Positions 4,058-26,881 of a stretch of 64,000 nt of DNA are shown piece by piece. Where the stretch lies: IMG/VR virus record IMGVR_UViG_3300042879_006196, positions 124,001-188,000 of that record. One strand, given 5' to 3'. Both the position numbers and the translations under genes were made by a program. Position 1 is the stretch's first letter, and every line of letters begins with the position of its first letter. The notes beneath the pieces were generated by a model that did not search any database, was not told the DNA's origin, and saw only the letters and a list, made by a program, of their open reading frames with translations.

Positions 4058-5110
4058 TTGATGAGTAAAAGGCTTGCAAATTTTGGAGGAGTGGGTGGAC
4101 AATATTCTCCTTTCTCACCAGGTGGTTCACCTTTATTTAGGGGTGGTCCAAGTGGTTATGCAGGTTATGGTATCAATAATTTCAGTGGAGACGTATCATT
4201 AGATGATTTGATGGGCAGATATAGAAAGCCTGATGTCCTTGGTGATTATGAAAGACCTTTAGAAACATTGCTTGAAACTTTTCATGATAATCTAGAAACT
4301 GATATCCCCAGTTATTTGTTATCACCTGAGGAAAGAAATGAGCTTTCTGTAAAAAAGAAAATTAGAAATAAAGAACAATATATAAAAAATCTTTCAAAAC
4401 CAAAATATAAAGATAATTCTAATGTACTAAAAAAACTACATACAGTTGAGGATTTGTTAGAAGATTTCAGAAAAAATACAAAAGTGGATTTTTCTAAATT
4501 TGCAGCTTATACTTATCCTGATGAGGCACCTTTAGAGATCAGATTAAAAAATGAATTTAATTCTCCTGATTCTTTTAGAAGAGAAAGAACATCGTTACCT
4601 GCAAATGATAATCAGATAATTTCATATGAAGAATATAAAAATGACCCTATGGCTAATGCACAATACACCGAAGCATTTACAGGTATTGCTCCTCAATATG
4701 AATTAGGAAAGGGCGTAGATAAGTACATAGATAACTTGAATAATCCTACTTTTCCAGAAAATCACAATATGCAAAATTCTACATTGTTGATTAATACACC
4801 AAATGAATCACAAACTTTTCATAATCATGAAGGGTCTTATTATGATTTACCGTCTCCAGTCACGCAAGAGTCGAAGAAAAACAATTTAACGCTAGAGCAA
4901 AAGCTACAAAAACTGAAAAAATCTCCCAAGAATTTAGATAGGCTTGATCCAGATTTTCTTAAAGGAATTCATTGGGATGAATATCTTAAAGGTATTGATG
5001 GAAAAGACAATCAAACACCTTGGGGTAATGATGGAATGGGTGGAAATGTCACGAATGAATATCCTGATACTAGTAACAATCCATATTTTAGCTTAGGAGT
5101 ACTGAGATGA
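4058..5110 (+). CDS. Hypothetical, putative head/internal virion protein (likely ATG start at 4061)
   Basis: 350-aa ORF in the head cluster; KRLA and KFAA motifs. Confidence 0.6.
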   Translation: MMSKRLANFGGVGGQYSPFSPGGSPLFRGGPSGYAGYGINNFSGDVSLDDLMGRYRKPDVLGDYERPLETLLETFHDNLETDIPSYLLSPEERNELSVKKKIRNKEQYIKNLSKPKYKDNSNVLKKLHTVEDLLEDFRKNTKVDFSKFAAYTYPDEAPLEIRLKNEFNSPDSFRRERTSLPANDNQIISYEEYKNDPMANAQYTEAFTGIAPQYELGKGVDKYIDNLNNPTFPENHNMQNSTLLINTPNESQTFHNHEGSYYDLPSPVTQESKKNNLTLEQKLQKLKKSPKNLDRLDPDFLKGIHWDEYLKGIDGKDNQTPWGNDGMGGNVTNEYPDTSNNPYFSLGVLR

Positions 5111-5547
5111 AATCCATTTTAAAAGCAATTGATTTGTTAGAAAAAAATGGTCAATATAGAATGGCTGATAAATTTCAGAATGAAATGATTCGTTTAGCTG
5201 CATGGCCCTACAACTTAGTTGCTTTAGATGAATTGCCATTGTCTGCTAGATTTTATACTTGGCAGAGAAATGAAAAAGATTTTCAAGAATTTGATAGGAA
5301 ATTTTATCAAGAACTTAAATGGAGAATTCCTGATTACAGAAATTTAAAAACTGACAAAGATGAAGCATTGAATCTTGAGGGTGAAATGCATGGACCAGAT
5401 GCTGTTCCAGGACCTGCCTACGTTGATCCAGGAAATTTGGCTTCTTCGCCTTCAATGAACGGAAGTTTGGAATATTTTACATGGGAAGAGGCGAGAGATT
5501 CAAACAAAGGTCCAAATGAATTTATCAATCTTATTCCGAGAAGGTAA
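5107..5547 (+). CDS. Hypothetical, putative head protein with shared N-terminal pro-peptide
   Basis: Translationally coupled ORF; N-terminus ...LEKNGQYRMADKFQNEMIRLAA. Confidence 0.6.
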   Translation: MKSILKAIDLLEKNGQYRMADKFQNEMIRLAAWPYNLVALDELPLSARFYTWQRNEKDFQEFDRKFYQELKWRIPDYRNLKTDKDEALNLEGEMHGPDAVPGPAYVDPGNLASSPSMNGSLEYFTWEEARDSNKGPNEFINLIPRR

Positions 5548-5574
5548 TTCACTTTTAAAGGAGAAAATATTATT

Positions 5575-6024
5575 ATGCCTCAGCCAATTATACCAATACA
5601 TCAGCAAGAATCACTCTCAATTCTATTTGGAGATTCTATGCAGCCAGAATTCAAATTCTCTGAACTGCAATCAATTCTTTTTCAGCAAACAGCATCTAGT
5701 AATGTTAATAAAAAATATTCATTAAATACAATAGAAGCATTACAAAATATTGATAAAAATACTGATTTTGTTGTCACAGCTGTTACAGATTCTAATGAAA
5801 GATATTGTTCAGTGCCAAATGAAATTGATAGTGAAACAGTGTTAGCTTTAAAAGCAGAGGGTTTAATTTCAGGTCATGGCAGATCTGTTAAAATTACTGA
5901 TAGAGGTAGAACTGCTTTAAGAGACGCTTATTTATCTACTAAAAATGCTTTAATGGAAAATAGAGCTTCTGAGAAATTTGACTATAATTCCTTTGCAAGA
6001 TTAGCAAGTAAAAAAGGAGAATAA
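5575..6024 (+). CDS. Hypothetical, possible winged-helix C-terminal half
   Basis: VLALKAEGLISGHGRSVKITDRGRTAL resembles a wHTH wing; AAGGAG RBS. Confidence 0.5.
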   Translation: MPQPIIPIHQQESLSILFGDSMQPEFKFSELQSILFQQTASSNVNKKYSLNTIEALQNIDKNTDFVVTAVTDSNERYCSVPNEIDSETVLALKAEGLISGHGRSVKITDRGRTALRDAYLSTKNALMENRASEKFDYNSFARLASKKGE

Positions 6025-7682
6025 TGTTAGATAAAATTACACAAGACAAAAAAATCTTAGAAGCATTCATAAAGATTGCTCAAAAACAAGCAAAGTCATC
6101 TAGACCTTCAGATGTTTTTGAGTCTTTATTGAAAATTGCTGAAGTGACTGACATTAAAAGGCTTATAATGAACATCAATGAAGATCTTGATTTTGAGTTT
6201 AGTAAAGCAAGATTAAACAGAGAAGAAAATAATGTTTTGAGGCAATCTTTGCTTGACAAAATTGATGATAACAATTTAAGCGACCCTGTTTTGCAGCCAT
6301 TTATCGAAGTGATTAACAAAAATTTTGCCTCACTTTACGAAATTGCCAATTCAACAATTCAATATATGAAAGATCAAAGCAAACAACATGGGGCAGAACT
6401 AATTACCTTGATGTTTACTGAAAATCCGCTTAAAGGATCTAAAGTTTCTAGAAATATTTGGAGATATATTTTGTTAGAGCTTTTTGGGAATAAGTCTGCA
6501 AATGTTCTGAAATCTATAAATGCTATTACTGGAACTGCATCACTAGTTGCAAAACGAGATAGAGGAACATCAATTGAAACTGGTGGAGTAGAAGGTAGCG
6601 AGATGCAAATTGCAAATCCAAATCAACTAAGTGTCACAGATGAGCTTTCAGGTGAACAGAAACTAAAATTGATGAAAAAACAAATTGATGAAATTTTAGC
6701 TGCACCAGATATGTTTTTGATTCAATATTTAATTGAACCACAAATTCCAGAATCTTTCAAAAAAGATACAAAAAGTTTTAAAAATTACTATGACGAATAT
6801 CTGCTACAATTAGAAAATGCTTCAACAGCTCAAGAACTAGCTAGTGTAGAAGAAAATATTAATAATTTTTTTGATGAGTTTGTTAGTTTTATCAAAGAAA
6901 ATATGGATGTTGGAAAACGTTACACACCAAAAAATATTTATAGGGAAAAAACTCTAAGAGATTTACAAAGAATGTGTGGAGAAATCATTGACCAACTTGA
7001 TTTAGATAATTTAGTAGATGATATTATAAATTCACCTTATTACCAACTTCCAAAACACATTAAAGCAGAGCTCGAAGAAAATCAATTAATAGTAAAAGAA
7101 TTAATCAAAGCAGCAATACAATCTGAAGTTGTTATGAATTTGAAGGAAAGGGAAGATATTCCTGTTCGACGAACTAAAGATAAAAAAAATAAAACAGCTC
7201 AAATAGATATTCTATACAACTTTTTATATAAAGCTATAAATAAAATAGAAACCGATCCAGAGAAGCAAGAAGAGCTTAAAAGAAGAGCATTATTGCTGAC
7301 AAAGGAAAAATATACCAAAGATGGCAAAGATAATGTTTCTGAAACAGTTTTCAGAATTTATCAACATGTTACGCCCATGATTAAATCAGGATTAATTTTT
7401 AAATATGTTAGAGACACAGGAAAAGAATTTGCTGAATTAACTCCAGAAGAAAAAATTAACATAATGAAACAAGTGCACGAAAAAGTTTACCCAGTTTTCA
7501 AAGTCAGGGATTTTTCTAAAAATAAATATAAAGCAGTCAGTAGCCCATATGATGAAGAGAAACATAAAGAATTAACAGAAAAACAAATCAAAGAAAAACT
7601 TGGTTTATCAGAAGAATCTGAAGATAGTAGAGAAAGTAACGCTCTTGCTCTTTTAATTAAAAAATATGCTTTTAGACATTAG
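6024..7682 (+). CDS. Hypothetical helical protein, putative internal head protein
   Basis: 552-aa ORF; KIAQ near the N-terminus and KKYA at the C-terminus. Confidence 0.6.
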   Translation: MLDKITQDKKILEAFIKIAQKQAKSSRPSDVFESLLKIAEVTDIKRLIMNINEDLDFEFSKARLNREENNVLRQSLLDKIDDNNLSDPVLQPFIEVINKNFASLYEIANSTIQYMKDQSKQHGAELITLMFTENPLKGSKVSRNIWRYILLELFGNKSANVLKSINAITGTASLVAKRDRGTSIETGGVEGSEMQIANPNQLSVTDELSGEQKLKLMKKQIDEILAAPDMFLIQYLIEPQIPESFKKDTKSFKNYYDEYLLQLENASTAQELASVEENINNFFDEFVSFIKENMDVGKRYTPKNIYREKTLRDLQRMCGEIIDQLDLDNLVDDIINSPYYQLPKHIKAELEENQLIVKELIKAAIQSEVVMNLKEREDIPVRRTKDKKNKTAQIDILYNFLYKAINKIETDPEKQEELKRRALLLTKEKYTKDGKDNVSETVFRIYQHVTPMIKSGLIFKYVRDTGKEFAELTPEEKINIMKQVHEKVYPVFKVRDFSKNKYKAVSSPYDEEKHKELTEKQIKEKLGLSEESEDSRESNALALLIKKYAFRH

Positions 7683-8037
7683 ATTCATAGCACAAACGCC
7701 CGAAACTTTAGCCAAAGGACTTATGCATTCGGCGCCTTTAGACAAAAACGAATGTGCTTTGTTTATATTTAATTACTTGGATGATCATAGTTTTTGGAAT
7801 AAAAATGTTGATTATCCAATAAGTCTTTTTTTTCTTGATGAAAATTTTGAAATTAAAAACATAGGTAAACTAGATGCACATCAAGAAAAACCATGCAGAG
7901 CTGAGTATCCTCTCACTAAATATGTAGTTGAAGGGCATTCAGATCTACCAATAGAATTTGATATAAGGGTAGGAGATTTTTGTTTACCTAATAATAATAA
8001 TAAAATAAAGGTATTAAAGGTAAAAAGAAATTCTTAG
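7666..8037 (+). CDS. DUF192 family protein
   Basis: IAQTPETLAKGLM...LFIF...FWNKNVDYPISLFFLDEN...YVVE pattern. Confidence 0.8.
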   Translation: MLLDIRFIAQTPETLAKGLMHSAPLDKNECALFIFNYLDDHSFWNKNVDYPISLFFLDENFEIKNIGKLDAHQEKPCRAEYPLTKYVVEGHSDLPIEFDIRVGDFCLPNNNNKIKVLKVKRNS

Positions 8038-8066
8038 AGAATACTTTAAATATCGGAGTAAAAAAT

Positions 8067-9455
8067 ATGGCAGATAGAGTTTTTCCAAATAATATAAATG
8101 TTGACATGGGTTCTAAAATTACATTCTCAGGAATAGATTGGGGCACTGTTGAAGCAAACATCAAAAATAATAAGTTCGCTAGTGACCAATCAGAAGAAGT
8201 GCAAGCACTTTTAAGAATGGCTAACGAGCAAATGGCTCCAGTTGAACAGACCACTAAAGCGCTTACACCAGAAAAAATAGCACAATACAGACCTAAATTG
8301 ATCGAAGCTTTAGATAAAATTGCAGAAGAAGCTCAAATGGATGATCAAAATAAAGAAAATTTTAAAGCTGAAGTTTTATCTGAATTTGAAAGAAATCCAG
8401 GTGATGAAGAATCAATCAAAAACTCGATTGCTGAATTACAAAAAGCAAATATTATTTCTGCTAACTCAGGAAATAAAATGCAAAGAACAGCTCTTATGAA
8501 AATTTATCTCCTTATGGCTAAAGCAATGGAAGATTTAATGTCTCAAGGCATGTCTGAAGAGGAAGCAAAAGCTGAAATTGAAAAAGATTTTTCAATTCTT
8601 GAAAACTATAGAGACATGTTACCAGAAGACAACTCTAGTCCAAAAGAATTAAAAGATTATTATCCAGATGATTACACTCCTGAATATCCTGAGTCAAAAA
8701 ATGATTTTGCCAACTCAAGAAAAACCAAAAGAGAAGCTATGAAAAAAATTGCATTTACACATCCTAGTCAAATAAGCGCTGAGGCAATTGAAAAAGCTAA
8801 AGCTGCTGGTGACACTAAACTCGTCAACACAATCTTAGCAGCAAGAAAAGCAAACAGACAAAGAATCGCTGCTGCGATAGAAGAAAAAAATGAAGTTTCT
8901 GAAAGAATTGCGCAAAGAAACAATATTTTGAAATTGGCTCAAATGGATGATCTTTTTGATGAGAAAGAAATGATGGATAACACAATGGATGACTCAATGG
9001 ATAACACAATGAACGATCCAATGAATGATCCAATGAAGAAGAAGCCTAGAGTGCCTGGAGATTTATCATTAGACGCAATGCTTCCAGCAGATGAATCTGA
9101 AGCCCCAACTTTAGCTTTCACTTCTCCAACAAAATTCACAAAGGCACAACGAGCATCATTTGCTAAAATTGCAAAATCTTTGGGTATGCCTGACGAATAT
9201 GTTAAAGCAATGTGCACACCAGTGCTTTCCCCTGAGACAGAAAGATTAAACAGAGAAATCAATGAAATTAAAATGTCAAGAGTCTCTGAAAAAACAAAAA
9301 ATTCTTTGATTAAAACTTTAATTAAAGAAGCAAAGCTTTCAACAGAATCAAAAAATGAATTTATCAGATATTGGAATGAAACATTAGGTTATCAAGACAA
9401 ACAGTTTTATAAAGATGTTGCCGCTGATTATGTTGACGGAAAAAAGGTGAACTAA
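8067..9455 (+). CDS. Hypothetical, putative head protein
   Basis: 462-aa ORF; KFAS, KKIA, KLAQ and KEAK motifs; short Met-rich repeat. Confidence 0.6.
   Translation: MADRVFPNNINVDMGSKITFSGIDWGTVEANIKNNKFASDQSEEVQALLRMANEQMAPVEQTTKALTPEKIAQYRPKLIEALDKIAEEAQMDDQNKENFKAEVLSEFERNPGDEESIKNSIAELQKANIISANSGNKMQRTALMKIYLLMAKAMEDLMSQGMSEEEAKAEIEKDFSILENYRDMLPEDNSSPKELKDYYPDDYTPEYPESKNDFANSRKTKREAMKKIAFTHPSQISAEAIEKAKAAGDTKLVNTILAARKANRQRIAAAIEEKNEVSERIAQRNNILKLAQMDDLFDEKEMMDNTMDDSMDNTMNDPMNDPMKKKPRVPGDLSLDAMLPADESEAPTLAFTSPTKFTKAQRASFAKIAKSLGMPDEYVKAMCTPVLSPETERLNREINEIKMSRVSEKTKNSLIKTLIKEAKLSTESKNEFIRYWNETLGYQDKQFYKDVAADYVDGKKVN
8970..9035 (+). repeat. Degenerate 12-bp coding tandem repeat (MDNT-MDDS-MDNT-MNDP-MNDP-M)
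   Basis: atggataacaca/atggatgactca/atggataacaca/atgaacgatcca/atgaatgatcca. Confidence 0.75.
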
Positions 9456-9458
9456 AAA

Positions 9459-10274
9459 ATGGGGATATTTCGAAAGGCTTCTGAACTAGAAAAATTGCCA
9501 ACTTCAATTTCTGATGCATTATTTGATAATAATGAAATCAGAATTGCAGATGAATTTGAAAGCCTTATAAAAGAGGCGTCTAGTGTAAATAATAAATCTG
9601 TTTACGAAAATAGATTGAAAAGTTTCCGTGAAGCTCAAGGAAAAGTAGTAGAATGGGAAAAACCAGAACCTGCTAGATATGAAGATCTTCCTGGTGGAAT
9701 TCGTAGAGCTGGATATGGTCAAAGATTTAGCGGAGAACATTCAGAGATGTTTGGTTCGGAGCAAATAAGATCAATCAGTTTTGATAACAATAAGTATGCT
9801 GAAAGTCTTTTGAATAATGGATTTTCAATTTGGGAACCTGAATTTGATGAACTGCAGGATGCTTTTGATGAATCTCAAAGACAGTCTAATGCTATTTTTG
9901 ACAGAAGAACTGCTGCCGAAAAGAAAGCTATTGCACATAGAAATTGGGAACAAGAGCAATCGAGCCAAATAAGAAAATCAAATGTTCTTCCATACAGAGG
10001 CTTGGGTGTTAGCAGACTTGCAAATGAAATGCCAATTCATCATGGTAATTTTAATTCAGTTGATGATTTTTATGCAGAAGCTCAAGATTCTATAAGAAAC
10101 ATGAGCAAAACAGCAAATTCTGAAAGAAAATCAGGAATTCAACGAAAAGGTGTTGACCCAAATGATCGAAGAGAGCAATGGGAAAATAAAGAAGCAATTG
10201 CAGCTAGAACAATGAAATCCCTTGAATCCAGTTCTCTTCTTGTAAGAATGGCAGAGGGATTAGATATTGAATGA
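9459..10274 (+). CDS. Hypothetical phage protein
   Basis: 271-aa ORF in the head operon. Confidence 0.6.
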   Translation: MGIFRKASELEKLPTSISDALFDNNEIRIADEFESLIKEASSVNNKSVYENRLKSFREAQGKVVEWEKPEPARYEDLPGGIRRAGYGQRFSGEHSEMFGSEQIRSISFDNNKYAESLLNNGFSIWEPEFDELQDAFDESQRQSNAIFDRRTAAEKKAIAHRNWEQEQSSQIRKSNVLPYRGLGVSRLANEMPIHHGNFNSVDDFYAEAQDSIRNMSKTANSERKSGIQRKGVDPNDRREQWENKEAIAARTMKSLESSSLLVRMAEGLDIE

Positions 10275-11068
10275 ATAAGTTTGCTCAGCAAGGTGTGTCA
10301 TTAAGTCAAGCTATAGAAGAGCTTAAAGCAATTAAAAACTCACCAGATGATGCAAAATTTCATGTAATTGAAAATTTGTGCAGTAATGTTCAAAGCCCGC
10401 AAATAAGCATGAAGCTTATGGAAATCAAAGGGAGCTTGCAGGCTAATGGAGAAATTACTACAATAGATCCTATCAGTGGAAAAAAATATCCAAATGCCAA
10501 TTCAAAAATTGATGAATTAATTTCATATTTGCATGAATTAGAACGAGCAGGAGAAAAACAAAAAATGAGTGGTAATAGTTTTAATTTTAAAAAATTTGCT
10601 CAAGAAAAGCAAAAAGAAAAAAAGAAATCTCGTGGCAATCCTTTTCGTGTTCTCATGGGTAAAATAGGAAAACTTCTTGATCATGGTTTGGAAAAAAAAG
10701 AAATTGTTAGATACTTGAAAAAAGAAAATATTTGGGATGAAAAAACCATAGACAAAGCAGTTGGTATTGTTAAAGAATACAACAAGAAAAAACACAGAAA
10801 AAATAAAAAAGAAGTGGAGGCATCTACACTTCCAAATACTGCTGAAGATTGGGGAAGAGTCAAAAAAGATTATTCAAAAAGATCCACTCCAGAATTAATT
10901 ACTTCAATTTGCTGGCTAAATTCACTTGCAAAAATAGATCCCAAAAAAACTTCCTTTGCTAAAGAGGTTGCAGACCGTTCTGGCGTGAAAACTATGATAA
11001 GAGAGATCAGAGCTGAACTTCTTAAAAGAGATATGTCCGAACAAGTTCTTGATTTCATGATGAAGTGA
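10271..11068 (+). CDS. Hypothetical basic phage protein
   Basis: 265-aa ORF; MNKFAQ and KKFAQ motifs; Lys-rich segment. Confidence 0.6.
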   Translation: MNKFAQQGVSLSQAIEELKAIKNSPDDAKFHVIENLCSNVQSPQISMKLMEIKGSLQANGEITTIDPISGKKYPNANSKIDELISYLHELERAGEKQKMSGNSFNFKKFAQEKQKEKKKSRGNPFRVLMGKIGKLLDHGLEKKEIVRYLKKENIWDEKTIDKAVGIVKEYNKKKHRKNKKEVEASTLPNTAEDWGRVKKDYSKRSTPELITSICWLNSLAKIDPKKTSFAKEVADRSGVKTMIREIRAELLKRDMSEQVLDFMMK

Positions 11069-11072
11069 GAAT

Positions 11073-12155
11073 ATGAAAAAATTAGCTGGAAATGATGTAA
11101 TTGTATTAATGAAAGCTGCTATGTCAGATAATGCAGTGTTAAAAGAGGCTCAAGCTTTAAGCTCTGATAACTTTGATAATGATGATTTATTAGTGAAATA
11201 CTTTTTCAAATCACATCCCCAAGGTTTTGCCTCAAAAAGTTTTCTTTCAAATAACAGAGTTGCAATTTCTTCATCTATTGATTCTTTAACTAAAATTAAA
11301 AAAGAAATTGTAAATCAAGGCTTAAGAAAAGCACACAATCTGATACAGAACATCAATCATTCAGATAATTTAGCTGTAGAACTAGAAAATTCTGTTAGTA
11401 ATTTTGAAAAAGATTCAAGTTTTCAATTACAAGTTAAAGCATCAAATTTATTGAATTTTTTATCTAAATACATTGATGGTGCTAGTCATAAAGAAGCAGC
11501 TAATCAAGCCTGTAAAAAGGTTAATGCTGGTAAACTTGATGAAGCTGTAGAAGACATTAGAAAAATATTTTCTTCAAAAAATCCAGGCGATAACATCAGA
11601 AAAGCCTTCACTACAGTTAAACAACAAATTGGTGAAGGATTCCAAATGTGTCCAAAAGGCATTTATCAGACAGGTTTTCCTGTTCCTATGGAGATTTCAA
11701 ATTGTAGGCATTATTGCATTGATGCTCGTTTACATCCAGATGGAACTGTGGGATGTAACTATCTTAAGTGGCTTAATGAAAATTTAATTACTCAAGAACA
11801 AGCTTTGAATCTTTTTGATAAAATGGATTACGATAAAGATGAAATTGAGTTTATGAATTTAGATAAAGGCGTAAGAACTAAATTCCCTAAATCAGATGAA
11901 GATTCGCAAGATTTAAGAATTTTGAGAGATGAAAAACTTACTAAAGATATTACTATGAAACCTTGGGAAGAGCAACTAGCAAAACAACATGTAAAAGAAA
12001 ATTCATCTGATTATCGTGATTTAACACCCACTAAAAACAGTATTGTAGCTTCAGACGATGCAATTGAAAAAATACTTTCTGATATTAGAGATGTTTTTGA
12101 TGAAAATGACCTAGACACTCTTGAAGAACAAATTAGAGCTGCAGTGGAGAAATAA
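11073..12155 (+). CDS. Hypothetical phage protein with a Cys cluster
   Basis: MCPK...CRHYCID...GCNY. Confidence 0.6.
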   Translation: MKKLAGNDVIVLMKAAMSDNAVLKEAQALSSDNFDNDDLLVKYFFKSHPQGFASKSFLSNNRVAISSSIDSLTKIKKEIVNQGLRKAHNLIQNINHSDNLAVELENSVSNFEKDSSFQLQVKASNLLNFLSKYIDGASHKEAANQACKKVNAGKLDEAVEDIRKIFSSKNPGDNIRKAFTTVKQQIGEGFQMCPKGIYQTGFPVPMEISNCRHYCIDARLHPDGTVGCNYLKWLNENLITQEQALNLFDKMDYDKDEIEFMNLDKGVRTKFPKSDEDSQDLRILRDEKLTKDITMKPWEEQLAKQHVKENSSDYRDLTPTKNSIVASDDAIEKILSDIRDVFDENDLDTLEEQIRAAVEK

Positions 12156-18200: not shown

Positions 18201-19453
18201 TAGCTGCTAAATTATTCTGCTCATACAAAGAAGCAGCAAGAGGTGTTTTGAGCAAATCAATTAAAACATCAGCCATTAAGGTTGTTGATGAAACCACACA
18301 TTCTACAACAATTTATGCAACATTGAAAGACATTGGAGCCAATGTGAAAGATGCGGCATTTAATGATAAGTTTAGAGATTTTGCAGTAGATTTGCTTTCA
18401 AATTCTGGCTATGCTGTTGATCCAAACACTTTTGCTTTAACAGATATTTGTGTTAATGAAGATGGAACAGTTTGCGGAAAAGTTAGCACAAGAGCAACAA
18501 AAACATTTAATCCAGAAATGCCTATGGATGAGATTGTGTCAGATAGTTACATTGATCCAGATAGATCTATGATGTCACAAGAACCAGAAATGGGGATGGG
18601 CATGGAAGAAGTTGGTGAAATTTTTGAGCCAGCTATGATGGTTATGTCTGATTCATATAAATCAATGAATAGAATTTCAAGATTGCAAAATCTCGTCAGA
18701 ATAGCACAAGGACTTGGTTTACCAGGCGCACCTGGCACTGCAGGTGCTCCAGCTGCTCCAGCTGCACCTGCAGAAGATCCATTAGGTGGAATGGCAGGTG
18801 GAGCTGCTGACTTAGGAGTTGGTTCACTGACAGGCACATCTCCTGAAATGGGTCTTGATGATCTAGGAATTAACGAATCACCTGAGCCAGGAAATAAAGC
18901 TCCTTGGGGGACAATATGTCCTCAATGTGGTTCCAAAGACATTGATGTTGCAAATGGAACAGGAAATTGTAACTCATGTCAAGCACAACTTACTTATAAA
19001 TTCATTGTTGAAGTTGCACCTCCAGATGAGAAAGGTCCAGAAGGCATGGAAATGCCAGAAGCACCAGCTACCCCTCCTGCTCCAGAGGGAGGGATTGGTG
19101 CTGCAGAAGCTGGTTTAGGTGGGTTGCCACCAGCGCCACCAGCGCCAGCTGCACCTGCTGCGCCTGGTGCTCCTGCAGCTCCTGCTTTAGCTTCGAATCG
19201 AAGAATTATGACAAGAGTAGCTTACAAAACTTCTGCACAAGTTTACGCAGAAGCACTAAACGAAGGATTTGTAAAAGAAGCCGCTTCAAAACTACCAGTT
19301 GGAATGATTTGTCCATCTTGTGGTTCTAGAAAAGCTTCAAAAATTTCTAAGTCAACATACTGCTATAGCTGTGGAACAGTGGCTGTAGCTAGTGTTAAAA
19401 AACTTGAAAATGAACCAGGAATGCTTGAAGCAAGCATTGTTTGGATGCAATAA
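15245..19453 (+). CDS. Prohead (capsid maturation) protease with a long scaffold-like extension and Zn ribbons
   Basis: N-terminal NTNGDYF...TFEGVPIYTNH...DVSMGC...CSICGN...FIELSCV protease-like domain; C-terminal CPQC/CNSC and CPSC/CYSC; lies between portal and capsid. Confidence 0.8.
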   Translation: MIKRGISGGMISISSLIDKNERTALGNNFMVKTSSSIREAAKIGLQSLYANADEVLEKYKDFDIIKEMKKRNGANLLWVRARSIDADVCNTNGDYFSEEELTKEVNYQGKKMPAYKTFEGVPIYTNHKNDNIEEAKGMVVYAEWDDEEKCVYCVFFIDEDAYPDIARGVRQGYIHDVSMGCSVDEGVCSICGNKATTERDYCDCLKKYKGKMHPSGKKAFEYNYGIKFIELSCVGDGAFESCEIIELYDQEELLQKAEAAIKTARSINSSIVVAASLNEGISSQREVESALRQLQNLNASIIKIAQTAGTLVGGQLIAGAGAQNATVVKVLQGLGIDPSSSLNILDLVNLALNFLEVAVLNLFSRKDNIDLGHVAKLTKAMGELQNTLQDMIDDGIETAGQKNAQPMVPASPQIPAGQTPAQPAPEAGAPVGQEAAPALPTQTAEFQTPAVGKMIAPFSQQQYVMPLGGGVSASNNNTRFVWASANGDVEEIVEHKKHNLNKIGKLAIAIDNLREACGIPLKNNEVTFNVPQNDKITASTGDKKIMDHFKKIAQDLKKQNTATLAVDIKVDDNTGNRVVLSTEKGIKGYHNGKLTTWTPNLTDTQFAQLENGDGYRVAADLLKDFSNTVRTAQKNQEIDTLIVMDEYVSGARTDEHVFIVDGIKNDHRKDSGHTMQERIDARRHNKVEDSVMEELLSGQQTHKLVRVVTELSNQAKKGLGHVPLEEMLHPDFGHSVVPGKEIMCNVMDGVVKTCLATKQSPENVLGFLTKSASDKNFGKILKLARLGKEAREYDLIMNKFAQTDLQLKDEVPPVENPALTPETEEVPMEQKALEDVADTASEETTEGEIISALNVIKENFETAVEKLTEILDKMSPESMDKEDEMKGALEDEEMVDNDAMKGAVTGLSLAGDEMNATPDEMIGAVNNMSADDMASGIEEARLPNRAVARAKSLTRSASKKNINENIIGWLADVANQNNIPTEKIALAAKLFCSYKEAARGVLSKSIKTSAIKVVDETTHSTTIYATLKDIGANVKDAAFNDKFRDFAVDLLSNSGYAVDPNTFALTDICVNEDGTVCGKVSTRATKTFNPEMPMDEIVSDSYIDPDRSMMSQEPEMGMGMEEVGEIFEPAMMVMSDSYKSMNRISRLQNLVRIAQGLGLPGAPGTAGAPAAPAAPAEDPLGGMAGGAADLGVGSLTGTSPEMGLDDLGINESPEPGNKAPWGTICPQCGSKDIDVANGTGNCNSCQAQLTYKFIVEVAPPDEKGPEGMEMPEAPATPPAPEGGIGAAEAGLGGLPPAPPAPAAPAAPGAPAAPALASNRRIMTRVAYKTSAQVYAEALNEGFVKEAASKLPVGMICPSCGSRKASKISKSTYCYSCGTVAVASVKKLENEPGMLEASIVWMQ

Positions 19454-19515: not shown

Positions 19516-21303
19516 ATGATAGACGGTCAAAGCGAACAATTAAATCGAATAAAAAAGGCAATGATAATTTCATCAGATAAAAATGAATTAGCAGATTGCA
19601 AGTCAGATCTCATGAAAAAAATAGCTATGGATGAAAAAGAAGCTGATGCGGTGGCAACATCAATCAGAGATATGTTCATGCCAAAACTACTTAAAGTCAT
19701 GGGTATTGATGAAGACGAAATGCCTGAAGATTTCATTGGTAAAATGACCGAAAACGACGAAAACTTCGAAGAAGAATACACTGATGAAGATCGTGATGAT
19801 GTTGAAATTGAAGATGAAGATGAAGAAGATGATTTTGATTTTTCAATGGATGATGAAGATCACGAAGAAGATGCTCAAATTGACGAAGACGAAGTAGGTG
19901 AAGATGAAATCGCTACGATCCACATCACAGTCCCTGCAGACAAAATAAGAGAGGTTGAAAAAGCTCTTGAAAATGTTCTGGGTGATACTGATGCACAATT
20001 TAAGGATCATGCAATGGGTGAAGACAAAGAAAGCCCTAAAGGAGAAAAAAACATGAATAAAGAAATTGAAGCTAGAAAAGCACTCAGAAAAACAATTCTT
20101 GCAGCTGTCGCTGAAGATGATGTAGAACATGTAGTAAAAGCTGACAGTTTTGATCACGATGCATCAGAACAATTTAACGAAGAAGGCTTTTATGAAACTA
20201 TGTCAGGTGGTTTAAAAGACCCAGAAATTGACGCTGTAACATATGCAGACATTGAAATTCCTAATTTTACTAATTTAGTAGATGGTTTAAGACCAGATTT
20301 AGGACTTTCTGAATCATTGAAAACATTCAAATTTGACGGCACACCTAATGATGCTGATGATTTTGAACTTAATTTCAATCCATTTGATATTCCTTCACAA
20401 GGCAATAAAGATCTCTATGATGGGGAAGGTCCTGTAATTCCTACAGAACGAAAACTACCTATGAAGAGAACAGTAAACTCCTCGTCTTTAGGCGAATTTG
20501 ATGCAGATGCTGCTGAAGAAGCACTAGCGTTTGCTCTTCGAAAAGCTGGAGTTGAAGAAGAAGACCTTGGAAAACTTACCTACGCTGAAGCTCTTGATTT
20601 ATTCAAGGCAATTAAAACAGCTAGTGATGACAGAGTTCACTACAGTAAAGATGGTGTCTTTAACGAATCTAACGGATTTATTGAAAACACTAATATCAAA
20701 AATCCAGATGCCGCTTCTAATAAAAAAGAAAAAATGGCGACAACTGAAGATCAACTTCATGATAAAAATGAAGAAGCAGGTCAAAGACTGTCTTCTACAC
20801 ATGATGAATATGCAGCAATGCTTAGAAAGTTGATGAAAGGCGCTTCTTATGCTGAAAAGGATGAAGAAGATGACAAAGATCATAACAAAGCCGAAGATAC
20901 TCTTAAAGTAGATGATCTCACAATCGAGGCAGAAGACAAAATGGCAAAAGAAGCCGAGCTTTACAAAGCACGACTAAAAACAGCTTTCGCTATGTCTAAT
21001 AAACTTGCCACTGCAGGAATCTTACCAATCAATGAGGTTGATGGATTCGCAGAAGGAATGCTCAGTGATGGATTAACCGTTACAGCAATGATTCGACAAA
21101 CAAAACTTATGCTTAATTCCGCAGCAGCTAACGCTGAAAAATATGCCGCAGCTTCTAGCTCGGTAAGAACAGCCTCTACTGGGATTGCCTTCAACCCGTC
21201 AGTTAGAGGAGCAAGTGCAGATTTAAGCGGTGCACAAGACATTCAAAATGCCTTAAGGAATCTTGGATGGTCAACACCAAAAGTTACTGGGGTGGAGGAA
21301 TAA
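19516..21303 (+). CDS. Putative capsid scaffolding protein (acidic)
   Basis: Very D/E-rich; lies between the protease and capsid genes; several KxA motifs. Confidence 0.6.
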   Translation: MIDGQSEQLNRIKKAMIISSDKNELADCKSDLMKKIAMDEKEADAVATSIRDMFMPKLLKVMGIDEDEMPEDFIGKMTENDENFEEEYTDEDRDDVEIEDEDEEDDFDFSMDDEDHEEDAQIDEDEVGEDEIATIHITVPADKIREVEKALENVLGDTDAQFKDHAMGEDKESPKGEKNMNKEIEARKALRKTILAAVAEDDVEHVVKADSFDHDASEQFNEEGFYETMSGGLKDPEIDAVTYADIEIPNFTNLVDGLRPDLGLSESLKTFKFDGTPNDADDFELNFNPFDIPSQGNKDLYDGEGPVIPTERKLPMKRTVNSSSLGEFDADAAEEALAFALRKAGVEEEDLGKLTYAEALDLFKAIKTASDDRVHYSKDGVFNESNGFIENTNIKNPDAASNKKEKMATTEDQLHDKNEEAGQRLSSTHDEYAAMLRKLMKGASYAEKDEEDDKDHNKAEDTLKVDDLTIEAEDKMAKEAELYKARLKTAFAMSNKLATAGILPINEVDGFAEGMLSDGLTVTAMIRQTKLMLNSAAANAEKYAAASSSVRTASTGIAFNPSVRGASADLSGAQDIQNALRNLGWSTPKVTGVEE

Positions 21304-22101: not shown

Positions 22102-22953
22102 ATGGCATTAAATAAAACTATGAACGAACAAAGAGAACAGATTGTTGCAATGGCTCTTGAAACTGCTGAGGGTAAAACAGCCCTTGCGCAAGCAATGGTC
22201 GAACCAATTAAAAACTCACTCATGTACCAAGCTATTGGTCGAAAACTTCTTCTCGTTGATGAACTTCCGCAAGGCGTTCTTCCTCGGTACGAAAGAGACG
22301 TGACTGCAAAGTCTTACGTTATCGGCAAAAGAGCTTCTGTACCTACTGCTGAAATCGAAGCTGAAGAGCTTTTGGTTCCAACATTCGAAATTGCTGCTAA
22401 CCCAGTAATTCGATATTCTGAAGTTAAAGCGCGAAGATTTTACATCGTTGACCGAGCACAAATCAGAGCAAAGGACTCACTTCAAAGACAAGAGGACACC
22501 GAGGTATTCAAGGTCATCAACGCTGGTACACCTAGCGACCAAACAATCTCGGTTAGTGGTACTGTTCAACTTGAACAAGTAAACCTTGCTCTCACTCTTA
22601 TTGAAGAGCACGAGTTGATCGGCGCGAAAATCGTCGTTCCTCCAGCACGATATAAGGATTTCAGAGGTTGGGGACCTGACGTTTATGATCAGGCAACACA
22701 ACGAGACATTCTTCAAACAGGCTTGTACGGACACCTTTATACAGCTGACATTCACTTGTCAACAATGGTTCCGAAAAACTGTGTGTTTGTAATGGCTCCT
22801 GCTCAGTTTGTTGGCGCTATGCCAATCAGACAAGATATTACAGTCCTTCCTGCAGACGACACAAGACGACTGCGACTTGGATGGGTTGTATACGAAGAGC
22901 TAGGATTCGCTGTTATCAACGACTTCTCGCTTTCGAAGATCATCGTTAGCTAA
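22102..22953 (+). CDS. Major capsid protein (HK97 fold)
   Basis: LAQAMVEPIKNSLMYQAIGRKLLLVDELPQG...VPTFEIAANP...QRQED...GWVVYEELGFAVIN; biased codon usage; followed by a strong terminator. Confidence 0.88.
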   Translation: MALNKTMNEQREQIVAMALETAEGKTALAQAMVEPIKNSLMYQAIGRKLLLVDELPQGVLPRYERDVTAKSYVIGKRASVPTAEIEAEELLVPTFEIAANPVIRYSEVKARRFYIVDRAQIRAKDSLQRQEDTEVFKVINAGTPSDQTISVSGTVQLEQVNLALTLIEEHELIGAKIVVPPARYKDFRGWGPDVYDQATQRDILQTGLYGHLYTADIHLSTMVPKNCVFVMAPAQFVGAMPIRQDITVLPADDTRRLRLGWVVYEELGFAVINDFSLSKIIVS

Positions 22954-24483: not shown

Positions 24484-24705
24484 ATGAAAGTTTCATTCAG
24501 AAACTTAGACAAAAATGTACCAGCTATAATTTCAGATTGTAGATGTGATAAAAGATTTATGGAGTTAGGAATATTACCTGGTAAAGAAATTGAAATTATA
24601 GAAGAGTGTCCTTTTGGTGGCACAGTAATTATCAACACACAATCTGGTTTTTTATGTTTGAGAAGAGAAGAACTTGATATAGATTTAAATACAAAAAAAG
24701 GATGA
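24484..24705 (+). CDS. feoA: FeoA family protein
   Basis: KRFMELGILPGKEIEIIEECPFGGTVII...LCLRREE. Confidence 0.85.
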   Translation: MKVSFRNLDKNVPAIISDCRCDKRFMELGILPGKEIEIIEECPFGGTVIINTQSGFLCLRREELDIDLNTKKG

Positions 24706-24732
24706 TTAAATAAAATTCTTTAAAGATAAACT

Positions 24733-26253
24733 ATGAGCTTTTCTGAAATTTTGAATAAACTTGCTACCAAAAAAATGATTGAAGGCGATACTGCCTTTGC
24801 ATATAATTTAGTCTCTTTCGCTGATAAATCTGAAGAAAATCCTGAAGATGATACTATAAAAGCCGAAATGTATAAAAAAGGTAAAGACAAAAAAACACAA
24901 GCAAGCCCTTTTGAGTTACTTATTCAGAAATATGCAGGAACCAAAGTAGCAGCATTTGATCCTGATCAGCCAGAAGTACCAGATGATCTTTACAATGAAG
25001 CTTACGGAGCATTTATTGCACATTTGATGGATTTTTATGAAGAATCTGAAGAAGAAGCAGAAGAAAGAGCTGAAAGACCAGATATGCAAGTTAAAAAAGA
25101 CAATTTTATTTCTAATTACATAGATGATGAGAGTGCTAGTAGATGGGAGGACAGTTTTGGTGATAGATATGAAGAATCTAGCACAAGAAAAACTACAAAA
25201 CAAGCATTTAGGTTTCTTCCGCTTCCCTCTGATGATAGATTTTTTTCATTTTATCCAAAAAAATCATGGATAAATGAATTGATGATTGATTTAGAAAATA
25301 ACACAGGATTGATGGATGCTAAATTAAAGTCAGGCAACAGAAAATACAAATTAACATTAATGCCTGAAGCGCCTGAATTTGGAGCTTTTGTAAGTGAGTT
25401 AAAGGAGTTAGAATACAGCCCAGAATTAAGTGGTGTTGGTCGATTCTATACTAAATACAAAAATAAAGCTTTTTCAGAAGAAATAATTCCAGATACGCAA
25501 GACACTACAATTGCGTTTAATACGTTGAGGCGAAAAGTTGTTTCTGCCAAAAAAGAATTAACTATTCAGCAAGTTAAAAATGAATTATCGCAACTAGGAG
25601 TTGCTCTGAAAAAAAACGAAAATGAATATCGTGTCAACTTCAAAGGTGGTAAAGAAGAAACAGCTTACTATACTGATGATTTGAATGACGCACTAGAAAC
25701 AGGAAAAGAAATGTCAAAAGAAATTAAAAAAACCTCATCAACTTTAAAAAGTTTAATTCATAAATATGCTGGTAAAGAAGGCAAAGGCTCTTTCAAGAAT
25801 AAAATCAAAGAAATGGACGGATTCTTGAGAATGGACGGAAAAGCATTTTGTTTTGAAAATAATGCTCAGGCTAAAAAAGCGCTTGCAGTGGCTGAAACCG
25901 CCGCTAACTTCTTGAATTGGCAAGTAATGAAAGGAGATGGCTGTTTTAAACTAATGGAAGCAGGAATGGATAAAAAATCAAACACCCTAAAAGAAATGAT
26001 TAAAAAATATGCAATGGAGTTTGATGATTTTGATGTTCCAGAAAGCGGAGCTACAATTGAAGAAATGTATGATGAGGAAGATAATTCTTATGTTGACAAT
26101 AATGAAATTATTGTTGATGGTTTTCAAGCTGGACTTGAAAATGATTTTGAAAATCCACATGATAAACTCAGCTACGAACATACATTATGGCAATTAGGAA
26201 ATGATGCTGGCAAAGAAATAAGTGATCATTTTAACATGATATCAGAGAAATAA
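24733..26253 (+). CDS. Hypothetical multi-segment protein, putative internal head polyprotein
   Basis: Repeated LIQKYAG / LIHKYAG / MIKKYAM junction motifs. Confidence 0.6.
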   Translation: MSFSEILNKLATKKMIEGDTAFAYNLVSFADKSEENPEDDTIKAEMYKKGKDKKTQASPFELLIQKYAGTKVAAFDPDQPEVPDDLYNEAYGAFIAHLMDFYEESEEEAEERAERPDMQVKKDNFISNYIDDESASRWEDSFGDRYEESSTRKTTKQAFRFLPLPSDDRFFSFYPKKSWINELMIDLENNTGLMDAKLKSGNRKYKLTLMPEAPEFGAFVSELKELEYSPELSGVGRFYTKYKNKAFSEEIIPDTQDTTIAFNTLRRKVVSAKKELTIQQVKNELSQLGVALKKNENEYRVNFKGGKEETAYYTDDLNDALETGKEMSKEIKKTSSTLKSLIHKYAGKEGKGSFKNKIKEMDGFLRMDGKAFCFENNAQAKKALAVAETAANFLNWQVMKGDGCFKLMEAGMDKKSNTLKEMIKKYAMEFDDFDVPESGATIEEMYDEEDNSYVDNNEIIVDGFQAGLENDFENPHDKLSYEHTLWQLGNDAGKEISDHFNMISEK

Positions 26254-26254
26254 A

Positions 26255-26881
26255 ATGAATAAACTTGCACACAATCTGGTGTCTCTTGCCAAAAATTTGC
26301 AAAATTTAGGCATGAGAAAAGAAGCAAAAAATCTTTTTTTCACAGCTGTAAAACTCGCTCACATGGATCACCCTTTACATGAAGTAGTTGAAAAAATGGG
26401 ATTTGAAAAAGCTGAAGATGGTAAAACTTCAAGTTTAGAAATTTTTATTCATGTACCTCCAAGCGGTAAAGCAGAATATGAATTAACAGAAAATGGAAAT
26501 TCACATGATTTTGATTCATTCGAAGAATTAGTGGCACATCTTGTTGATAAAGATCAATCAGATTGTGGTTGTGGATGTGGCGGAAATTGCAAAACAGCAG
26601 CTGCAAAGAAAAAAAACCAAGGCAAAAAACTTAATAAACCTTTTAGAACTCCAGGTGGACCTAAGAAATTTTCAGTTTATGTAAAAAATGAAAAAGGAAA
26701 TGTTATCAAGGTAAACTTTGGCGATCCAAATATGTCTATCAAAAGGGATCAACCAAACCGCAGAAAAAACTTTAGAGCAAGGCACAATTGTGATAATCCT
26801 GGACCAAAAACAAAAGCAAGATATTGGTCGTGTAGAATGTGGTCGAAACCATCTGTTTCTAAGATTTTAAAAGGCAAGTAG
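26255..26881 (+). CDS. Hypothetical with a basic C-terminal domain of a type common in large phages
   Basis: KLNKPFRTPGGPKKFSVYVK...VNFGDPNM...FRARHNC...ARYWSCRMW; CGCGCGGNC linker. Confidence 0.65.
   Translation: MNKLAHNLVSLAKNLQNLGMRKEAKNLFFTAVKLAHMDHPLHEVVEKMGFEKAEDGKTSSLEIFIHVPPSGKAEYELTENGNSHDFDSFEELVAHLVDKDQSDCGCGCGGNCKTAAAKKKNQGKKLNKPFRTPGGPKKFSVYVKNEKGNVIKVNFGDPNMSIKRDQPNRRKNFRARHNCDNPGPKTKARYWSCRMWSKPSVSKILKGK

What the first reader, a model, noticed from the sequence alone, without database searches (positions are those of the whole stretch)
4058..26881. Pervasive [K/R]-x-A motif marks a large set of putative protease-processed head proteins
SEEN: unrelated ORFs repeatedly carry KIAQ, KFAQ, KLAQ, RLAK, KTAS, KKYA, KEAS, RTAS or RIAQ, often at the extreme N-terminus (MSKRLA, MNKFAQ, MKKLAG, MSWYRLAK, MNKLAH, MSKIFKKIAQ) or at domain boundaries in the portal, protease and scaffold. 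KNOWN: T4 gp21 and phiKZ gp175 proteases cut many head proteins at short motifs ending in Glu. INFERENCE: this phage's protease cleaves after [K/R]-x-A, and the motif can predict which hypothetical proteins are packaged, including outliers at 29785, 43583, 44968 and 56592.
Basis: partly seen in the sequence, partly recalled or inferred. Interest (0 to 1): 0.6.

Follow-up and report, generated by a model that had tools for sequence, protein, structure and literature searches.

The report
Basic-x-Ala protease motif in megaphage heads
The head genes of this 347-kb phage-G-like jumbo phage, and of eight relatives, carry far too many [Lys/Arg]-x-Ala motifs at conserved ends and junctions, which most likely mark where the phage's own head protease cuts, a specificity not among those I could find described for phages.

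Summary
In + strand genes 4058-26881, [KR]-x-A occurs 123 times against 69 expected (z 7.3). The rest of the window and of the 347-kb genome sits at chance.

An unbiased scan of all 400 spaced residue pairs puts R.A or K.A first in nine related head modules. These include Bacillus phage G, Tunturi_5 and Rhodococcus phage Finch. Their tail genes show no excess. The same scan on T4 recovers the known gp21 motif [L/I]-x-E.

The gene 15245-19453 carries an N-terminal protease with the herpesvirus/T4 gp21 fold and invariant His127 and Ser178. It is fused to about 1150 residues dotted with conserved [KR]-x-A-[Q/S] sites.

Best reading: the motif is P3-x-P1 of this protease, which cuts after Ala. This is inferred, not shown.

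The bare motif cannot predict packaging, because 477 copies elsewhere occur at chance frequency. A newly noticed N-terminal tag does better. It is a 35-residue helical hairpin ending in [KR]-h-[A/S]-Q, carried by 12 unrelated proteins here and by hundreds of metagenomic proteins. It supports outliers 29785 and 44968. It does not support 56592, and 43583 has only a high-scoring site. I rate this a new variant of a known kind.

The parts
15245..19453 (+). 1402-aa protease fusion protein: an N-terminal prohead protease followed by about 1150 residues of helical bundles, small beta domains, zinc ribbons and long low-confidence linkers. It carries 25 [KR].A sites.
   Evidence: phrog_18299 head maturation protease, E 1.7e-20, aa 83-241. 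The family has 145 clusters, mostly 1375-1445 aa. AF2 of aa 250-1402 gave mean pLDDT 58.
15446..15994 (+). Protease catalytic domain (aa 68-250). The candidate catalytic residues are His127 (nt 15623-15625) and Ser178 (nt 15776-15778). A Cys cluster (C188, C191, C202) is inserted in the domain.
   Evidence: AF2 pLDDT 83.6. VIA-align Z 10.4, rmsd 2.5 A, 129 residues aligned to T4 gp21 (5jbl); Z 8-9.4 to herpesvirus proteases. H127, S178 and the cysteines are invariant in 24 sequences.
16151..16159 (+). KIA (aa 303-305, context IIKIAQ), just after the C-terminal helix of the protease domain. This is the candidate site that releases the protease from the rest of the protein.
   Evidence: Kept in 95% of 78 homologues below 45% identity, as [VI][KR]LAQ. 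It lies at the start of a pLDDT<50 segment.
18698..18706 (+). RIA (aa 1152-1154, context VRIAQ), the best conserved internal site. Other deeply conserved sites are at nt 15356, 16895, 17132, 17900, 18107 and 19328.
   Evidence: Present in 100% of the far homologues, with K/R swaps and a variable middle residue. Coordinates verified.
12523..14901 (+). Portal protein. It has RLA at aa 44-46 (nt 12652-12660) in the variable N-terminal region ahead of the conserved core, and a C-terminal DUF559 endonuclease-like domain.
   Evidence: phrog_16240, E 2.6e-36; Portal_Mu and DUF559. A motif at or near the aligned column in 5 of 7 genomes by inspection of the alignment; the stricter count (within 2 columns) finds 3 of 6 orthologues, with flank identity 0.18.
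4058..12467 (+). Nine motif-bearing head-module genes of unknown function (4058, 5107, 5575, 6024, 8067, 9459, 10271, 11073, 12156) plus a motif-free DUF192 gene (7666-8037). The motifs sit at extreme N-termini (nt 4070, 10277, 11079, 12168) and near C-termini (nt 5998; the KYA close to the C-terminal end of the 6024-7682 product).
   Evidence: Synteny with G001-G004. WY[KR]xA and the C-terminal [KR].A are kept in orthologues at 34-47% identity.
19516..21303 (+). Putative scaffold, assigned by position only (between the protease and the capsid genes). It has 15 sites, including conserved KIA at aa 35 (nt 19618) and RTA at aa 551 (nt 21166), about 45 residues from the C-terminus.
   Evidence: No family hit. 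Site 551 is kept in 4 of 4 orthologues with flank identity 0.35.
22102..22953 (+). Major capsid protein. It has a conserved G-K-T-A at aa 24-27 (nt 22174-22182 covers KTA).
   Evidence: phrog_2522, E 4.8e-65. 48.7% identity to phage G gp27. Matches PDB 6wkk at E 4e-89, and that chain begins at Met1.
5107..5208 (+). N-terminal helical hairpin tag ending in IRLAA. Further copies lie at 26255-26368 (+), 29788-29892 (+), 45199-45300 (-), and weakly at 9498-9590 (+).
   Evidence: Hairpin HMM and alignment A3. The hairpin end is conserved in relatives.
24733..26881 (+). Two further motif-bearing genes downstream of the capsid gene. 24733-26253 carries three [IM][QHK]KYA[GM] copies. 26255-26881 carries a hairpin tag.
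29785..30321 (+). Outlier with a hairpin tag ending in VKIAS. This is the top-scoring non-head site in the genome.
   Evidence: Score 5.2 with a weight matrix trained only on relatives. An orthologue in L037 keeps IRLAS.
44968..45300 (-). Outlier with a hairpin-like N-terminus ending in LIKIAQ.
   Evidence: Orthologues in G001 and G003 keep EL.[KR]IAQ at 48% and 32% identity.
56592..57452 (+). Outlier with N-terminal KKIAQ only. Its status is open.
   Evidence: No orthologue in G001-G004. One site against 3.2 expected. No family hit.
43583..44257 (-). Outlier with WY..KTA behind an uncertain GTG start, next to a head-tail adaptor-like gene. Its status is open.
   Evidence: Weight-matrix score 3.9. 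Its neighbour 43099-43590 hits phrog_195.

Best explanation
[K/R]-x-A is the recognition motif of this phage lineage's prohead protease, read as P3-x-P1 with a preference for Gln or Ser at P1'. The protease is a Ser/His enzyme of the herpesvirus-assemblin/T4 gp21 fold.

In this clade the protease is made as the N-terminal domain of a 1400-residue polyprotein. Inside the procapsid it would cut after Ala at several kinds of site:
- it frees itself from the polyprotein (site at aa 303) and dices the rest;
- it trims the portal N-terminus and both ends of the putative scaffold;
- it removes short N- or C-terminal tags from about a dozen small head-module proteins.

A subset of substrates, encoded both inside and outside the head module, carries a 35-residue N-terminal helical hairpin that ends exactly at the motif. 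I take this hairpin to be a capsid-targeting propeptide that is clipped off.

What is shown: the enrichment, its restriction to head genes, its conservation across the lineage, the site-level conservation, the protease fold and its invariant His/Ser, and the shared tag.

What is inferred: that cutting occurs, which bond is cut, and that the tagged proteins are packaged.
For: 1. Enrichment is limited to the head module: 123 against 69, z 7.3; about 1x in the rest of the genome.
2. R.A or K.A is the top spaced pair of 400 in all nine head modules tested: the window, G001-G005 (GC 34-57%), phage G, Tunturi_5 and Finch, with capsid-protein identity down to 27%. Enrichment is 1.35-1.9x with p from 4e-4 to 6e-10. 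Reversed-pattern and tail-gene controls sit between 0.85x and 1.3x.
3. Pooled over seven head modules, [KR].A is 783 against 497. No other residue fits either position.
4. Positive control: the same scan on T4 head genes ranks I.E 1st and L.E 3rd. [LI].E is 1.9x in head genes and 0.89x in tail genes. So the scan recovers a known P3-x-P1 motif.
5. Sites are kept at aligned columns in 31.5% of comparisons, against 12-25% for control patterns. Ten sites in the fusion protein are kept in 95-100% of 78 homologues below 45% identity, with K/R swaps and a free middle residue. This retention ranks 2nd of 54 patterns.
6. The protease fold and invariant His127/Ser178 are established.
7. Motifs sit at extreme N-termini (7 of 19 against 27 of 436), near C-termini, and upstream of conserved cores.
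8. In 92 independent N-terminal hairpin proteins, conservation runs up to [K/R]-h-[A/S]-Q and then stops.
9. Flank preferences (L/M at -4, I/V at -3, T/I at -1, S/Q at +1) lie mostly on the N-terminal side of Ala.
Against: - No mature termini were seen. Everything rests on sequence statistics.
- The phage G capsid chain in PDB 6wkk begins at Met1, so the perfectly conserved capsid-protein site is probably not cut. Conservation alone therefore does not prove cleavage.
- The AF2 model of the polyprotein is poor (pLDDT 58). Conserved sites are not significantly concentrated in low-confidence linkers.
- The flanking information is weak, at 1.2 bits or less per position.
- Cutting 3-7 residues from an N-terminus is unusual for a propeptide.
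- The homologous genes share ancestry, so the nine head modules are not fully independent samples.
Confidence: 0.65

Rival explanations
1. The motif is recognised by the protease, but the scissile bond follows the basic residue (P1 = K/R, with Ala at P2').
For: From my own recollection, not checked here: HK97 gp5 is cut after a Lys. The data here fix only the spaced pair, not the bond.
Against: The motifs of T4 gp21 and SPN3US gp245 are P3-x-P1 pairs (PMC10052503). From my own knowledge, not tested here: phiKZ gp175 has the same pattern, and herpesvirus assemblin has P1 Ala.

Flank preferences lie on the N-terminal side of Ala and at the residue just after it. Conservation of the hairpin tag ends at [A/S]-Q, not at K. 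An invariant P2' Ala would be unusual for a serine protease.
Confidence: 0.12
2. The motif is a short binding or assembly signal that is not cut. For example, it could be a contact for the capsid protein, scaffold, portal or DNA that recruits proteins into the procapsid.
For: The capsid-protein site is conserved yet apparently uncut in phage G. The hairpin also occurs at C-termini without a trailing motif. From my own knowledge, not tested here: helix-turn-helix coat-binding domains exist in P22-type scaffolds.
Against: A three-residue signal scattered 10-25 times along single proteins fits dicing better than docking. The T4 control shows the same statistical footprint for a true cleavage motif. 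The motif follows the lineage that carries this protease family: the gene is fused or stand-alone in the window, G001-G005 and phage G, and a head maturation protease is annotated in Tunturi_5. In Finch no protease gene was identified.
Confidence: 0.13
3. The enrichment is a by-product of Ala- and Lys-rich helical head proteins and of shared ancestry, and has no function of its own.
For: Head proteins here are richer in Ala and Lys/Arg and largely helical. Homologues inherit sites.
Against: Per-protein shuffles control for composition. The reversed pair A.[KR] and all other [KR].X and X.A pairs are not enriched. The signal persists from GC 31% to 57% and at 27% capsid-protein identity. Sites occur in non-helical contexts such as MSKRLANFGG. 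K/R swaps with an invariant Ala point to selection on the pair.
Confidence: 0.05

Closest known systems
T4 gp21 prohead protease with its [L/I]-x-E sites and the capsid targeting sequence of the internal proteins
   Same: Same protease fold (Z 10.4 to 5jbl). A P3-x-P1 spaced motif is over-represented about 2x in head genes and not in tail genes. Short N-terminal tags on otherwise unrelated packaged proteins are removed at the motif (T4 CTS: Mullaney and Black 1996, as cited in PMC9024508).
   Different: P1 would be Ala and P3 basic, instead of Glu and Leu/Ile. The protease is fused to a 1150-residue polyprotein. The tag is a 35-residue helical hairpin rather than a peptide of about 10 residues. 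No Pfam match to the T4 family.
phiKZ gp175 / SPN3US gp245 proteases of jumbo phages (A-x-E motif)
   Same: A jumbo phage in which many head and ejection proteins would be processed at one short motif. In SPN3US there are preferences at P4 and P1' (Val and Ser), and several motif copies lie inside propeptides (PMC10052503).
   Different: A different motif, and a different capsid and portal lineage (phage G type). Here the evidence is sequence statistics only, whereas SPN3US has mass-spectrometric termini.
Herpesvirus assemblin (pUL26 type), which cuts (V/L/I)-x-A|S at the release and maturation sites
   Same: Shared fold (Z 8-9.4). Ala at the inferred P1, with Ser or Gln enriched just after it. 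The protease is made as the N-terminal domain of a longer scaffold-like protein, with a site just after the protease domain (aa 303) and a site about 45 residues from the C-terminus of the putative scaffold. The herpesvirus specificity is from my own knowledge and was not tested here.
   Different: P3 is basic rather than hydrophobic. There are many more sites and substrates. There is no detectable sequence similarity.
Bacillus phage G gp19 (head maturation protease) and its head module
   Same: gp19 is 41% identical to the protease domain. K.A is the top spaced pair in phage G head genes, 61 against 34. Basic N-terminal tags such as MKRLISKTAA recur.
   Different: gp19 is a stand-alone 300-residue protein. 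No hairpin tag was found in the first 32 kb of phage G. I could not read Gonzalez et al. 2020 (PMC7316594 is not held), so any cleavage data in it are unchecked.
N-terminal packaging signals such as P1 DarB residues 1-30
   Same: An N-terminal segment of about 30 residues that directs otherwise unrelated proteins into the capsid (PMC9024508).
   Different: The function of the hairpin here is inferred only. It resembles a single TPR-like helix-turn-helix, and no Pfam or PHROG family covers it.

Membership tests
Assemblin-fold prohead serine proteases (T4 gp21 / herpesvirus protease / HK97 gp4 type) | Characteristic beta-barrel protease fold | tested here: met
   AF2 model pLDDT 83.6. Z 10.4 (rmsd 2.5 A, 129 aa aligned) to T4 gp21; Z 8-9.4 to six herpesvirus proteases. 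Unrelated MCE proteins score Z 6.8 or less.
Assemblin-fold prohead serine proteases (T4 gp21 / herpesvirus protease / HK97 gp4 type) | Conserved catalytic His followed by Ser | tested here: inconclusive
   His127 and Ser178 (in SMG) are invariant in 24 sequences and lie in the His-then-Ser order. Their superposition on the catalytic residues of gp21 could not be inspected.
Assemblin-fold prohead serine proteases (T4 gp21 / herpesvirus protease / HK97 gp4 type) | Sequence-family membership | tested here: met
   phrog_18299 head maturation protease, E 1.7e-20. No Pfam family reaches threshold; there is only a faint Peptidase_S78_2 hint in G005. No PDB sequence match.
Assemblin-fold prohead serine proteases (T4 gp21 / herpesvirus protease / HK97 gp4 type) | Gene lies between the portal and major capsid genes | tested here: met
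   Portal 12523-14901, protease 15245-19453, capsid protein 22102-22953. The order is syntenic in G001-G005 and phage G.
Assemblin-fold prohead serine proteases (T4 gp21 / herpesvirus protease / HK97 gp4 type) | Cleaves head proteins at a defined motif during maturation | not testable with these tools
   Only the statistical footprint was seen.
Capsid-targeting propeptide systems (T4 CTS type) | A common N-terminal tag on otherwise unrelated proteins | tested here: met
   The hairpin tag is found on 12 proteins of this genome and on relatives' proteins. 92 of the best 150 of 677 library hits carry it at the N-terminus.
Capsid-targeting propeptide systems (T4 CTS type) | The tag ends at the protease motif | tested here: met
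   58 of 92 have [KR].A at the hairpin end. The end consensus is K/R 72%, A 54% or S 21%, Q 33%, and conservation stops after it.
Capsid-targeting propeptide systems (T4 CTS type) | The tag is sufficient for packaging, and tagged proteins are found in the virion | not testable with these tools
Herpesvirus-type cleavage specificity (V/L/I)-x-A|S | Ala at P1 with a small or polar P1' | tested here: inconclusive
   Ala is the fixed residue, and S/Q are enriched after it. The scissile bond itself is not known.
Herpesvirus-type cleavage specificity (V/L/I)-x-A|S | Hydrophobic P3 | tested here: not met
   The position two residues before Ala is K or R. V.A is only 1.18x.
TPR repeats | Match to a TPR profile above threshold | tested here: not met
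   Only a faint TPR_2 hit (E 0.007, 16.9 bits against a cutoff of 27) in one representative. 18 of 150 library hits are multi-repeat proteins.

The most novel reading that the evidence does not exclude
A modular tag-and-release system is common in uncultivated large phages. A single 35-residue TPR-like helical hairpin (typical form MLKELIKLANxLDxKGxxKEADxLDxIIKKIAQ) would dock any attached protein into the procapsid. It would then be clipped at its terminal [K/R]-h-[A/S]|Q by a protease with a basic-x-Ala specificity not among those I found described for phage proteases. A second tag, MWY[K/R]x[A/C/S], may work the same way. If so, packaged and ejected proteins of megaphages could be read off genomes, and the tag could serve as a cargo-loading handle.
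Probability: 0.35. Interest if true: 0.75.

Novelty: new variant of a known kind. Interest (0 to 1): 0.6.

Why it matters
Proteolytic maturation decides which proteins end up inside large phage heads and in what form. The cleavage rules are known for only a few systems: T4, the phiKZ/SPN3US group, HK97 and the herpesviruses.

A basic-x-Ala rule shared by phage G, acidobacterial and actinobacterial jumbo phages and an abundant metagenomic clade would have three consequences:
- It would extend the known range of specificities of the assemblin fold towards the herpesvirus P1-Ala type.
- It would explain a 1400-residue protease polyprotein family with at least 145 clusters.
- Together with the hairpin tag, it would give a sequence-only way to list candidate packaged or ejected proteins in uncultivated megaphages.

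The idea can be tested directly in phage G, which can be grown.

Tried and rejected
**Literature.** Gonzalez et al. 2020 on phage G (PMC7316594) is not held. The phage G multi-omics and tail papers give no cleavage sites. Searches for a phage G cleavage motif or cluster C mycobacteriophage processing found nothing usable.

**Docking.** No docking test was run.

**Sequence and family searches.**
- A PDB sequence search with the protease profile gave no true match.
- Pfam on the protease and on parts of the fusion gave only zinc-ribbon hints.
- The portal as a single query found only one close relative in viral contigs. I used whole-record searches instead.

**AF2 of the polyprotein.** I expected conserved sites to fall in linkers. 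Four of nine lie in pLDDT<50 segments, but 40% of all residues do too, so this is no evidence either way.

**Avoidance in tail genes.** There is none: 17 against 16.3.

**P1 widened to Ser or Cys.** [KR].S is 0.94x and [KR].C 0.78x, so Ala alone carries the general signal.

**Context of hairpin representatives.** The contigs are too short. A tblastn search with a 35-residue tag found no match in cultured phages.

**DNA-level repeat as the cause.** Rejected, because the motif persists from GC 31% to 57% with K/R swaps and a variable middle residue.

Full report
**What the window is.** The window is bases 124001-188000 of a single 347,392-bp virus contig with 33.6% GC. Its major capsid protein (22102-22953) is 48.7% identical to gp27 of Bacillus phage G. 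It also matches capsid proteins of Tunturiibacter phage Tunturi_5, Rhodococcus, Gordonia and Mycobacterium jumbo phages and phiRSL1.

The region named in the finding is the head module:
- large terminase at 1923-4031;
- ten small to medium genes at 4058-12467, with no known family except a DUF192 gene;
- portal at 12523-14901;
- a 1402-residue protein at 15245-19453 whose first 250 residues are a head maturation protease;
- two unassigned genes at 19516-21303 and 21364-22080;
- the capsid gene.

- In the + strand genes of 4058-26881, [KR].A occurs 123 times against 69.0 +/- 7.4 in per-protein shuffles (z 7.3). The other genes of the window give 62 against 65.6.
- Along the whole genome the observed/expected ratio stays near 1, except at 120-160 kb, where it peaks at 3.0.
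- A scan of all 400 spaced pairs, made with no prior choice of pattern, ranks R.A first and K.A third in the head module. Neither stands out in the remaining 101,534 residues.
- The reversed pair A.[KR] is at expectation.
- Pooled over seven head modules, [KR].A is 783 against 497. No other residue in either place exceeds 1.24x.
- Flanks show modest preferences: Leu/Met at -4, Ile/Val at -3, Thr/Ile at -1, and Ser/Gln at +1 relative to Ala.
- A motif starts within the first ten residues in 7 of 19 head-module proteins against 27 of 436 others (p 1.8e-4).

**It is a property of the lineage.** I assembled the head modules of five metagenomic relatives (capsid identity 92-55%, GC 34-57%), phage G, Tunturi_5 (29%) and Rhodococcus phage Finch (27%).
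- In every one, R.A or K.A is the most over-represented spaced pair (1.35-1.9x, p from 4e-4 to 6e-10). Tail or other genes of the same loci sit at about 1.0.
- Sites are kept at aligned columns more often than control patterns: 31.5% against 12-25%.
- Examples in otherwise diverged regions:
  - WY[KR]xA at the start of the small gene before the portal;
  - [KR].A a few residues before the C-terminus of the 5575 family;
  - a site in the variable portal N-terminus;
  - a site about 45 residues from the C-terminus of the 19516 family.
- In a 100-sequence alignment of the protease fusion family, ten sites of the window protein (aa 38, 262, 303, 551, 616, 630, 886, 955, 1152, 1362) are kept in 95-100% of 78 homologues below 45% identity. 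They show K/R swaps and a variable middle residue. Retention of [KR].A ranks 2nd of 54 patterns, behind only the hydrophobic-core pair.

**The protease.**
- Residues 68-250 fold with confidence (pLDDT 83.6).
- They match T4 gp21 best (Z 10.4, rmsd 2.5 A, 129 residues), then six herpesvirus proteases (Z 8-9.4).
- His127 and Ser178 are invariant in 24 sequences, and three cysteines form an inserted cluster.
- Phage G has the same domain as a stand-alone 300-residue protein, gp19.
- In the metagenomic clade it is fused to about 1150 residues. This family has at least 145 clusters, some interrupted by inteins.
- The fused part models poorly (pLDDT 58), as helical bundles and small beta domains joined by long low-confidence stretches.

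**Why I read the motif as a cleavage motif, cut after Ala.**
- The decisive control is T4. Applied to gp20, 67, 68, 21, 22, 23 and 24, the same blind scan ranks I.E first and L.E third. [LI].E is 1.9x there and 0.89x in baseplate and tail genes. So a prohead protease's P3-x-P1 motif leaves the same kind of footprint as seen here.
- The T4 gp21 and SPN3US gp245 motifs are spaced pairs ending at P1 (PMC10052503). From my own knowledge, phiKZ gp175 follows the same pattern.
- The flank information lies on the N-terminal side of Ala and at the next residue.
- In 92 independent proteins carrying the hairpin tag, conservation runs up to [K/R]-h-[A/S]-Q and then vanishes.
- None of this shows a cut. 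The capsid protein keeps G[KR][TV]A at residues 24-27 in all relatives, yet the deposited phage G chain starts at Met1. So a conserved site need not be a used site.

- Several motif pairs near N-termini belong to one 35-residue helical hairpin with the pattern h..K[IL]A..A..LD..G...EA......h[KR]hA.
- It heads 12 otherwise unrelated proteins of this genome. Five are in the window (5107, 26255, 29785, 44968, and weakly 9459). It also heads proteins of the relatives.
- A profile search of 1.84 billion representatives found 677 proteins at E 0.001 or better. Of the best 150, 92 carry the hairpin at the N-terminus in front of unrelated bodies of 35-800 residues.
- No Pfam or PHROG family covers it.
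- I take it as a candidate capsid-targeting propeptide, by analogy with the T4 CTS and the P1 DarB signal (PMC9024508). This is inference only.
- A second recurrent start, MWY[K/R]x[A/C/S], heads 8 of 455 proteins from five unrelated families.

The bare motif has no predictive value outside the head module: 477 copies against 508.7 expected. A weight matrix trained only on relatives enriches high-scoring sites 16-fold in the head module. It ranks the 29785 site first among non-head sites, 43583 fourth, and 44968 within the top 30.
- 29785 and 44968 also carry the hairpin with a conserved end in relatives, so they are good candidates.
- 56592 and 43583 remain open.

**Limits.**
- I could not read the phage G capsid paper.
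- I could not run the complex prediction.
- I could not inspect model coordinates.
- The nine head modules are related, so they are not independent in the strict sense.

Noticed in passing
window 12156-12176, and G000 positions 68910, 72591, 74901, 77823, 80840, 303189, 308658: Eight of 455 proteins begin with M(S)WY[K/R]x[A/C/S]. Four are paralogues and four are unrelated. 8 of the 14 WY[KR] in the whole proteome sit at the extreme N-terminus. Relatives keep MWYRIAQ and MWYKFAN. This may be a second N-terminal tag.
   Followed up: partly
window 14542-14850 (portal aa 674-776): The portal carries a C-terminal DUF559 / restriction-endonuclease-like domain (E 2.7e-11). It is kept in G001-G005 but absent from the shorter phage G portal.
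   Followed up: partly
window 23447-24430 (-), and G000 307603-308634: Two phage genes encode type IV pilin-like proteins with the N-terminal methylation motif (FTLIELLVV; PF07963, E 2.3e-7). One is inserted on the opposite strand just after the capsid gene, and G001 has it too.
   Followed up: no
window 7666-8037: A DUF192 gene (E 7e-16) sits inside the head module. It is conserved in G001-G004 and has no [KR].A at all, unlike its neighbours.
   Followed up: no
window 15806-15850 (protease aa 188-202): An invariant Cys cluster (C188, C191, C202, within CSICG...YCDC) is inserted in the protease domain. It looks like a zinc ribbon, and further zinc ribbons lie near the C-terminus of the fusion protein.
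   Followed up: no
homologues P0043, P0049, P0051-P0058, P0067, P0068 of 15245-19453: Many homologues of the protease fusion protein are 1745-2150 residues long and carry intein and LAGLIDADG domains (PF14528, PF14890). The window copy has none.
   Followed up: no
window 47411-49310: A cluster of 15 tRNA genes on the + strand. The ORFs listed over it (47361-47669, 47833-48240, 48424-48672 and others) are probably spurious.
   Followed up: no
window 2-1069 (-), and G000 317174-318391: A TnpB/OrfB_IS605 gene with a Cas12f-like TNB domain lies just upstream of the terminase region. A protein with a similar N-terminus (MLKAYKFLIKPAKEQ...) lies elsewhere in the genome but was not scanned against families, so calling it a second copy is unverified.
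   Followed up: no
window 24484-24705, 26977-27843, 49641-50489 (-): A FeoA domain protein, a sugar-nucleotidyl transferase (PF00483, E 7e-70) and an Amidase_2 lysin candidate.
   Followed up: no
window 37340-42064 (-): A 1574-residue protein in the presumed tail/baseplate block has no [KR].A at all against 3.8 expected. The block as a whole is at expectation.
   Followed up: partly
L001 (phage G) 4754-18253: Phage G head-module proteins repeatedly start with basic tags of the form M-[KS]-[KR]-L-[IK]-K-K-x-[AS], for example MKRLISKTAA, MKRLIKKASV and LKRLIKKSN. Several annotated starts are TTG or GTG.
   Followed up: partly
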